A stretch of DNA of 63,960 bases, counting the filler, from Octopus bimaculoides (taxonomy: Eukaryota), in NCBI RefSeq assembly GCF_001194135.2. It is 6 parts of 5 records of this genome, joined end to end, with 100 filler letters (N's around TTAATTAATTAA, not from the genome) between each part and the next. Parts side by side here need not be neighbours in the genome. Positions count along the whole stretch, not along the records: positions 29,643 to 60,638 come from NC_068981.1; 5 more parts are not named here. One strand, 5' to 3'. Shown here piece by piece: positions 54,116 to 54,461 of the stretch. Position numbers and translations under genes: made by a program. The notes under the pieces are model-generated. The model was not told the DNA's origin, did no database searches, and saw only the letters and a program-made list of their open reading frames with translations. Numbering within the stretch: the first letter of the stretch is position 1; each line of letters starts with the position of its first letter.

Positions 54116-54461
54116 TATACTTCATTCAATTTGCCATCAAGTCATTACATAGAAGTAGTAGCTGCGGGCTGGACAATAACATTAGTGAGATGAATGATGA
54201 AAAAAATGGCATTAATGAGAGAAAGCAGATGACGCCCGCCGATCCCTGCTTTTCTAAAACATTGTTCTTTTACAAAACACACAATTTGAGGTAATAAACC
54301 TCTTGCTAATGTTCCATTGGACACAAGGTCCTTACAATGAGGCACCAAGCCTCTTACCAAAAATAATACAATGTCCTTACAAATGAGACAATAGGCCTCT
54401 TACATTTTCTCTTATGGGTCATATGCCCTTTCAGTATGAGGCACTCAGCCTCTTAATTTTA

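What the first reader, a model, noticed from the sequence alone, without database searches (positions are those of the whole stretch)
54288..54452. Array of four spaced hairpins with compensatory changes, right after a gag-like stop codon
Seen: four 15-nt units start at 54288, 54339, 54385 and 54438 (spacing 51, 46, 53 nt), with differing sequence between them. On the minus (ORF sense) strand they read GAGGC-tgagt-GCCTC, GAGGC-ctatt-GTCTC, GAGGC-ttggt-GCCTC and GAGGT-ttatt-ACCTC. Loops vary while stems hold. One unit swaps C-G for T-A. Another has a change that is a G-U wobble only on the minus strand. Three units are followed by an at..tg(t/a)aagg(a/g)c motif, and a second hairpin GGAC-cttgt-GTCC lies in one spacer. 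The array begins ~10 nt downstream of the stop at 54462. Inference: a structured 3' UTR RNA element (protein-binding, packaging or stability signal). The layout resembles CRISPR repeat-spacer arrays only superficially; nothing suggests CRISPR function.
Basis: partly seen in the sequence, partly recalled or inferred. Interest (0 to 1): 0.72.

Follow-up and report, generated by a model that had tools for sequence, protein, structure and literature searches.

The report
Four short hairpin repeats, octopus DNA
Four copies of a small hairpin-forming motif, about 50 bases apart, really do sit just after a reading frame in a decayed, unclassifiable fragment of an octopus-type genome, but whether they ever acted as an RNA signal cannot be settled from this one copy.

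Summary
Four units sit at 54287-54304, 54338-54355, 54384-54401 and 54437-54454. Each forms a 5-bp stem with a 5-nt loop on the minus strand. The array starts 9 nt after a stop codon. The window holds no other unit.

It is a degenerate four-unit tandem repeat with a 46-53 nt period. Its 18-nt core differs in 3 of 52 cells, against 41 of 152 for loops and spacers (p = 0.0008, chosen post hoc). Decay is therefore not uniform.

The covariation evidence is thin: one compensatory pair and one G-U wobble. That is not significant by shuffling (113/500) and only marginal by simulation (2.6-10%).

"Gag-like" is not supported:
- The reading frame crosses a 193-N assembly gap.
- The CCHC knuckle scores below Pfam's cut-off and lies in a frame with six stops.
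- The 100-codon tail has no homologue among 1.8 billion representative proteins.

No Rfam family matches. The host is an Octopus-like genome, and the roughly 1.2-kb fragment lies between two SINE copies. No family copies could be retrieved, so the decisive covariation test remains undone.

Best reading (about 0.38): a fossil RNA hairpin platform in the 3' tail of a dead retroelement-like unit. A neutral minisatellite is nearly as likely. Interest is low to moderate.

The parts
54270..54460 (-). Whole array: four degenerate tandem units with a 46-53 nt period. Each unit has a conserved 18-nt hairpin core followed by a partly conserved tail.
   Evidence: Mean column identity is 66%. A covariance model built from the units finds only these four in 31 kb.
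54437..54454 (-). Unit A core: stem 54448-54452 / 54438-54442, loop TGAGT.
   Evidence: Folds at -9.1 kcal/mol on the minus strand.
54384..54401 (-). Unit B core, loop CTATT. One pair is a G-U wobble on the minus strand and an A-C mismatch on the plus strand.
   Evidence: Folds at -5.1 kcal/mol on the minus strand and -0.9 on the plus strand.
54338..54355 (-). Unit C core, loop TTGGT.
   Evidence: Folds at -9.1 kcal/mol.
54287..54304 (-). Unit D core, loop TTATT. The innermost pair is U-A where the other units have C-G. This is the only compensatory change.
   Evidence: Folds at -6.7 kcal/mol.
54319..54331 (-). Second small hairpin, GGAC-CTTGT-GTCC, in the spacer of unit C. Unit A has a looser counterpart; units B and D have none.
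   Evidence: RNAalifold does not keep it in the consensus structure.
54462..55346 (-). Decayed reading-frame relic upstream of the array, treated as one broken gene. The frame carrying the CCHC knuckle has six in-frame stops upstream of a 193-N assembly gap. The last 100 codons (54465-54764) are open and end at TAG 54462-54464.
   Evidence: No Pfam family in any of the six frames apart from sub-threshold zf-CCHC. No homologues. Codon-position composition is coding-like, with 39% G at position 1, and the antisense frame is also open.
55101..55142 (-). CX2CX4HX4C zinc-knuckle motif.
   Evidence: Pfam zf-CCHC, E = 0.0011, 19.4 bits, below the 20.8-bit cut-off (E = 0.0039).
54765..54957 (.). Assembly gap of 193 N. 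Frame continuity across it is meaningless.
53741..54120 (-). Flanking tRNA-type SINE copy whose head abuts the fragment. It bounds the fragment on the array side.
   Evidence: It is 81% identical to a SINE copy on an Octopus sinensis contig.
55347..55693 (+). Flanking SINE copy in the opposite orientation, with its head abutting the fragment. It bounds the fragment on the upstream side.
   Evidence: (I1-I6).

Best explanation
The array is a four-unit, degenerate tandem repeat of about 50 nt. It lies in the untranslated tail directly after the last reading frame of a dead, unclassified, probably retroelement-like fragment (about 54121-55346, minus strand) in an Octopus-type genome.

Shown: each unit keeps an 18-nt core that forms a 5-bp, 5-nt-loop hairpin in ORF-sense RNA, and the core is conserved while the loops and spacers drift.

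Inferred: while the source element or gene was alive, the transcript's tail displayed four equivalent hairpins as a multivalent platform. A protein would have read stem shape plus the invariant unpaired flanks (AA before the stem, A after it) rather than the loop sequence. The most plausible partner is the unit's own nucleic-acid-binding protein, serving RNP assembly or 3'-end recognition. The copy in the window is a fossil cut off by SINE insertions, and nothing suggests it acts now.
For: - Four exact matches to the 18-nt pattern against 0.12 expected by chance.
- All 20 stem cells pair on the minus strand. The plus strand loses one pair.
- The minus strand is also the strand of the only coding-like frame, and the array starts 9 nt after its stop.
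- Stems plus flanks differ in 3 of 52 cells, against 41 of 152 for loops plus spacers (Fisher p = 0.0008). At the background rate, 3 or fewer changes in 40 stem cells has p = 0.002. The units therefore diverged under unequal constraint rather than by uniform decay.
- One double change keeps a pair, and the one single change is a wobble. Three random substitutions give this outcome in 2.6% of simulations.
- Tandem repeats in the 3' untranslated parts of retroelements are a known source of arrays (PMC9659126).
- Shape-read hairpins that act additively in 3' UTRs are known (PMC6294493).
Against: - The covariation is a single event. The tool's shuffle control reaches it in 113 of 500 trials.
- The core was picked after looking, and the A/T-rich spacers align poorly, which inflates the contrast.
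- The whole-array fold is not exceptional (z = -1.9). Inter-unit pairings compete with the local hairpins.
- Five-bp stems are short.
- There is no Rfam match and no evidence of transcription or a poly(A) signal.
- The upstream protein has no relatives, so a retroelement origin is unproven.
- No second copy was found anywhere: in the piece, in 41 kb of mollusc DNA including Octopus sinensis, or in the metagenome, viral and prokaryote collections.
Confidence: 0.38

Rival explanations
1. A neutral relic. A roughly 50-nt minisatellite happened to have a short palindrome in its unit, expanded to four copies by slippage, and has decayed. The G+C-rich core looks conserved only because the A/T-rich spacers mutate and slip faster and align badly. 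It has no function at RNA or DNA level.
For: - The layout is tandem with a variable period of 46-53 nt.
- The surroundings are a patchwork of SINEs, microsatellites and gaps.
- The upstream frame is broken.
- Covariation is not significant by shuffling.
- Stem against loop alone gives p = 0.10.
- The finding was picked by eye from much sequence, so multiple testing is heavy.
Against: Core against the rest gives p = 0.0008, and p = 0.002 at the background rate. All four units keep full pairing despite about 27% divergence elsewhere. The three non-palindromic flank positions are invariant in all four units (0 of 12 cells changed).
Confidence: 0.32
2. A DNA-level element. The units would be four palindromic binding sites for a dimeric DNA-binding protein. 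They could be tandem enhancer-type repeats at the start of a 3' LTR, an insulator-like site array as in the gypsy untranslated region, or subterminal transposase-binding repeats.
For: - The half-sites are inverted 5-mers spaced one helical turn apart, centre to centre.
- The flanks are invariant.
- The repeats have a roughly 50-bp period and lie directly after the last reading frame, where an LTR U3 region would begin in an LTR element (established knowledge, not tested).
- Three of the four units are equally palindromic on both strands.
Against: - A symmetric double change, as in unit D, is not expected for independent half-sites.
- Spacings of 51, 46 and 53 bp are not in helical phase.
- There is no second array (a would-be 5' LTR) within the 6 kb upstream that the piece holds.
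- There are no terminal inverted repeats.
- No transposase, integrase or RT domain appears in the fragment.
Confidence: 0.15
3. A regulatory hairpin cluster in the 3' UTR of an unannotated host gene, working like tandem Roquin/Regnase or Smaug sites to set mRNA decay or translation.
For: The hairpins are read on the ORF strand just after a stop. Tandem shape-recognised hairpins act additively in known 3' UTRs (PMC6294493).
Against: - The loops are pentaloops of varying sequence. Turning a CDE triloop into a pentaloop abolishes its activity (PMC6294493).
- None of the loops has the CNGG start of Smaug sites (my own knowledge of that motif).
- The protein has no relative in any annotated proteome, including Octopus.
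- The upstream frame carries six stops.
Confidence: 0.08

Closest known systems
Tandem repeats in the 3' untranslated regions of retroelements (Ogre hypervariable 3' UTR, HeT-A 3' region, L1/CR1 3' UTR arrays; PMC9659126)
   Same: A short array of degenerate head-to-tail units lies directly after the last reading frame of a repeat-like fragment. The period is variable, there are only a few copies, and no function is established.
   Different: Here each unit carries a conserved palindromic hairpin core. The element itself cannot be classified: no RT, integrase or gag domain was found.
3' stem-loops of stringent-type LINEs and their partner SINEs (UnaL2, ZfL2, SART1, R2; PMC5135761)
   Same: An RNA hairpin in the 3' tail could be read by the element's own protein. 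A TGTAA string, the repeat unit of the UnaL2 tail according to that paper, follows the hairpin in two units and recurs late in the tail of unit D.
   Different: Those are single stem-loops of 8-10 bp with a bulge at the very 3' end, shared with a SINE and preceded by an RT reading frame. Here there are four 5-bp stems without a bulge, no RT, and the SINEs in the window lack the motif.
Tandem Roquin decay elements (CDE/ADE) in 3' UTRs (PMC6294493)
   Same: Several small hairpins in one 3' UTR are recognised mainly by shape and tolerate stem changes that keep pairing.
   Different: CDEs need a YRN triloop (ADEs a U-rich hexaloop), and pentaloop mutants are inactive. The loops here are 5 nt long and variable.
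CRISPR repeat-spacer arrays
   Same: Short, partly palindromic repeats at regular spacing.
   Different: This is a eukaryotic (octopod) genome. The conserved core is only 18 nt. The "spacers" are homologous to each other, and there are no cas genes.

Membership tests
Tandem repeat / minisatellite | Head-to-tail units of 10-100 bp that are homologous over the whole unit | tested here: met
   There are four units of 46-53 nt. Homology extends beyond the hairpin into the tail. Mean column identity is 66%, below TRF's detection level.
   The core differs in 3 of 52 cells, against 41 of 152 for the loops and spacers, p = 0.0008. Caveats: the core was chosen post hoc and the spacers align poorly.
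Structured RNA element supported by covariation | A statistically significant excess of pair-preserving double changes | tested here: inconclusive
   There is one compensatory pair and one wobble in four paralogous units. Shuffling reaches this in 113 of 500 trials. The simulation gives 2.6% (with the kept double change) to 9.6% (all pairs kept on either strand). No family copies were available.
Any Rfam family | A score at or above the family's gathering threshold | tested here: not met
   No matches in the piece at gathering thresholds. Only chance-level matches (E of 0.67 or more) in 54100-54520.
Retroviral/retrotransposon Gag | A capsid-type gag domain and a CCHC knuckle within one reading frame | tested here: not met
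   No gag family appears in any frame. zf-CCHC scores 19.4 bits, below the 20.8 cut-off. The knuckle's frame has six in-frame stops and is cut by an N gap.
Retroviral/retrotransposon Gag | A recoding signal and a pol frame downstream of the gag stop | tested here: not met
   Three in-frame stops fall within four codons at the ORF end. No other frame stays open and no domain lies downstream.
Stringent-type LINE 3' stem-loop | A single 8-10 bp bulged stem-loop at the 3' end, after an RT reading frame, shared with a partner SINE | tested here: not met
   The stems are 5 bp with no bulge. No RVT domain was found. The motif is absent from the SINE copies and from the LINE 3' UTR in the window.
Roquin CDE/ADE | A YRN triloop or a U-rich hexaloop | tested here: not met
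   The loops are TGAGT, CTATT, TTGGT and TTATT, all 5 nt. The definition comes from PMC6294493.
CRISPR array | A prokaryotic locus with near-identical repeats, unrelated spacers and cas genes | tested here: not met
   The window shares SINE and LINE repeats at 80-92% identity with Octopus sinensis. The spacers share a motif with each other.
LTR (U3 tandem enhancer repeats) | The same sequence repeated as a 5' LTR, TG...CA ends and target-site duplication | not testable with these tools
   No second array lies within the 6 kb upstream that the piece holds. The downstream end is cut by a SINE. Full copies are needed.

The most novel reading that the evidence does not exclude
The fragment is a relic of an undescribed cephalopod mobile-element family. 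Its transcript would carry an array of pentaloop hairpins, read by shape and flank, as the docking platform for the element's own orphan protein. That would be a multi-hairpin cis signal unlike the single 3' stem-loops known from LINEs.
Probability: 0.15. Interest if true: 0.5.

Novelty: new member of a known kind. Interest (0 to 1): 0.25.

Why it matters
If family copies confirmed pairing constraint, this would add a multi-hairpin 3'-tail signal and an orphan protein to the poorly catalogued repeat content of octopus genomes. Mobile elements and 3' UTR regulation are of special interest in those genomes. As it stands, this is one decayed copy with suggestive but statistically weak evidence. 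Its main value is as a concrete query for a family search in octopod assemblies.

Tried and rejected
**Searches for relatives, all empty**
- Protein searches with the 100-codon tail gave no usable hit. The single hit is a repetitive, unrelated protein.
- A protein search with the knuckle segment found nothing.
- PDB sequence search found nothing.
- Exact-product look-up found nothing.
- Protein-guided scans of metagenome and viral contigs found nothing.
- Hairpin-pattern scans of viral, metagenome and prokaryote contigs found no relatives. The 40 metagenome pattern hits are unrelated repeats, with no BLAST similarity.
- Self-BLAST of the piece found no other copy.
- The covariance model found only the four known units in the piece and nothing credible in 41 kb of mollusc DNA. 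Its one marginal hit, at 43954-43995, is a different sequence.

**Structure prediction**
- Single-sequence structure prediction of the tail gave pLDDT 41, which is unusable, so no fold search was run.

**Ideas rejected**
- Recoding (frameshift or readthrough) stimulator after a gag stop: three stops fall within four codons and no downstream frame stays open.
- CRISPR: the genome is eukaryotic and the spacers are homologous to each other.
- miRNA or snoRNA: only chance-level Rfam scores, and the stems are far too short.
- A likeness of the stem arm to the pentanucleotide bound by polyomavirus large T antigen, recalled from memory: no helicase, Rep or T-antigen domain appears in any frame, and the site arrangement differs.
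- A conserved two-hairpin unit: the second hairpin occurs in only two units.
- An imperfect 14-nt direct repeat bracketing the array as a target-site duplication: 11 of 14 matches, reached by 6.5% of shuffles.

Full report
**1. The observation**

Read on the minus strand, the region holds four units:
- GAGGC-TGAGT-GCCTC at 54438-54452
- GAGGC-CTATT-GTCTC at 54385-54399
- GAGGC-TTGGT-GCCTC at 54339-54353
- GAGGT-TTATT-ACCTC at 54288-54302

Each is preceded by AA and followed by A. All four match one 18-nt search pattern exactly. Nothing else in the window matches it even with one mismatch. The chance expectation is 0.12, and 0 of 100 shuffles reach four matches.

The reading frame ends with TAG at 54462-54464, and two more in-frame stops follow within the next three codons. 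The first stem starts 9 nt after the TAG.

**2. What kind of repeat it is**

The units are homologous beyond the hairpin, so this is a degenerate tandem repeat with a period of 46-53 nt. Tandem Repeats Finder misses it because mean column identity is only 66%.

Divergence is not uniform:

| Part of the unit | Cells differing from the column majority |
|---|---|
| Stem | 3 of 40 |
| Invariant flanks | 0 of 12 |
| Loops | 5 of 20 |
| Ungapped spacer columns | 36 of 132 |

- Core against the rest gives Fisher p = 0.0008.
- At the background rate, 3 or fewer changes in 40 stem cells has p = 0.002.

Two caveats apply. The core was defined after looking, and the A/T-rich spacers align poorly.

**3. 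Pairing evidence**

All 20 stem cells form standard pairs on the minus strand.
- Three pairs never vary.
- One pair varies on one side, as a G-U wobble.
- One pair changes on both sides, from C-G to U-A.

The tool's shuffle control reaches this in 113 of 500 trials, which is not significant. In a simulation that drops three substitutions into the 40 stem cells:
- 9.6% of runs keep all pairs on at least one strand.
- 2.6% do so with a retained double change.

Each unit alone folds as the hairpin on the minus strand, at -5.1 to -9.1 kcal/mol. On the plus strand only three of four fold this way. The whole array is not exceptionally stable (z = -1.9), and the minimum-energy fold pairs units with each other. 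The second hairpin exists only in units A and C.

The evidence for an RNA-level constraint is therefore suggestive but marginal.

**4. The "gag-like" frame**

The 201-aa reading frame crosses a 193-N assembly gap at 54765-54957.

Downstream of the gap, 100 codons are open.
- Their codon-position composition looks coding, with 39% G at position 1.
- The antisense frame is also open. Two open frames occur in 10 of 5000 shuffles.
- This tail has no Pfam family.
- It has no relative in the 5.8-billion-protein word search.
- Among 1.84 billion representative proteins it has one hit, which is spurious and repetitive.
- It has no PDB relative.
- Its structure model is unusable (pLDDT 41).

Upstream of the gap lies a CX2CX4HX4C knuckle at 55101-55142.
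- It scores 19.4 bits against Pfam's cut-off of 20.8.
- Its frame holds six in-frame stops in 131 codons.
- It has no homologues.
- No other frame of the fragment hits any Pfam family.

"Gag-like" is therefore a weak guess. No pol frame or recoding signal follows the stop.

**5. Context**

A LINE-type reading-frame fragment at 45617-46057 has its named relative in Octopus sinensis, at 72% identity. SINE and other repeats in the window match an O. sinensis contig at 80-92%. The piece therefore comes from an Octopus-like genome.

The fragment that holds the finding, about 54121-55346, is bounded by two copies of a tRNA-type SINE in opposite orientations, with their heads abutting the fragment. 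The piece is a patchwork of SINEs, microsatellites and six N gaps.

**6. Search for relatives**

None was found in any of these:
- the piece itself
- 41 kb of mollusc DNA, including O. sinensis
- metagenome, viral and prokaryote contig collections, by protein or by hairpin pattern
- Rfam

The collections at hand hold almost no octopus genomic DNA. The decisive family-level covariation test could therefore not be run.

**7. Interpretation**

My estimates for the competing readings are:

| Reading | Estimate |
|---|---|
| Fossil RNA hairpin array in the 3' tail of a dead, probably retroelement-like transcription unit. It would once have served as a multivalent platform read by stem shape plus the invariant flanks. 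| 0.38 |
| Neutral minisatellite with a palindromic core | 0.32 |
| DNA-level palindromic binding sites, for example enhancer-type repeats at the start of an LTR | 0.15 |
| Host-gene 3' UTR regulatory hairpins | 0.08 |

- In favour of the RNA reading are the orientation with the reading frame, the strand asymmetry of the wobble, the compensatory pair and the non-uniform conservation.
- The neutral reading is nearly as likely because there are few events and the selection was post hoc.
- Against the DNA reading are the symmetric double change, the unphased spacing and the lack of a second array in the 6 kb upstream.
- Against the host-gene reading are the pentaloops, which fit neither Roquin nor Smaug site definitions (the Smaug definition is from my own knowledge), and the absence of any annotated relative.

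**8. Comparison with known systems**

It is closest to the tandem repeats known in retroelement 3' untranslated regions (PMC9659126). By mode of action it is closest to the 3' stem-loops of stringent-type LINEs (PMC5135761) and to tandem shape-read decay hairpins (PMC6294493). It fails the defining features of each of the latter two families, as it does those of CRISPR.

**9. Verdict**

This is a real, non-random sequence feature. Its functional meaning is unresolved and rests on one decayed copy. Interest is low to moderate.

Noticed in passing
window 52711-53065 (-), 53741-54120 (-), 55347-55693 (+): There are three copies of one tRNA-type SINE, 79-88% alike. They match a SINE on an Octopus sinensis contig at 81-88%. 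Two of them flank the fragment head-to-head in opposite orientation.
   Followed up: partly
window 44927-46350 (+): A LINE-type 3' fragment ends in an (AAT)n tail. It contains a 146-aa open frame at 45617-46057. It is 81-92% identical in DNA to an O. sinensis locus, but the segments lie in a different order there. The protein is 72% identical to an uncharacterised O. sinensis protein. No Pfam domain was found.
   Followed up: partly
window 54235-54248 and 54473-54486: An imperfect 14-nt direct repeat (11 of 14 matches) brackets the array, one copy inside the end of the reading frame and one after the last unit. A match this good arises in 6.5% of shuffles, so it is probably chance.
   Followed up: partly
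window 55240-55261: A near-perfect 22-nt palindrome (8-bp arms around a 4-nt centre plus G/C ends) lies in the upstream part of the fragment.
   Followed up: no
window 54465-54764: Both the minus-strand frame and one plus-strand frame are free of stops over the same 300 nt. That happens in 10 of 5000 shuffles. Only the minus frame has coding-like codon-position composition.
   Followed up: partly
window 53300-53560 (-): By eye, a second and different tRNA-like repeat follows a (GT)n run, with a stretch resembling a T-arm. ARAGORN calls no tRNA anywhere in the piece.
   Followed up: no
window 34374-34488, 35265-35680, 47792-48059, 51954-51963, 54765-54957, 59570-60065: The 31-kb piece holds six assembly gaps (runs of N). 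Several listed ORFs are artefacts that run through them.
   Followed up: yes
window 55141-55160: A run of ten C lies directly upstream of the zinc-knuckle codons. Such homopolymers are prone to length errors in draft assemblies, so the frame relations around it are uncertain.
   Followed up: no
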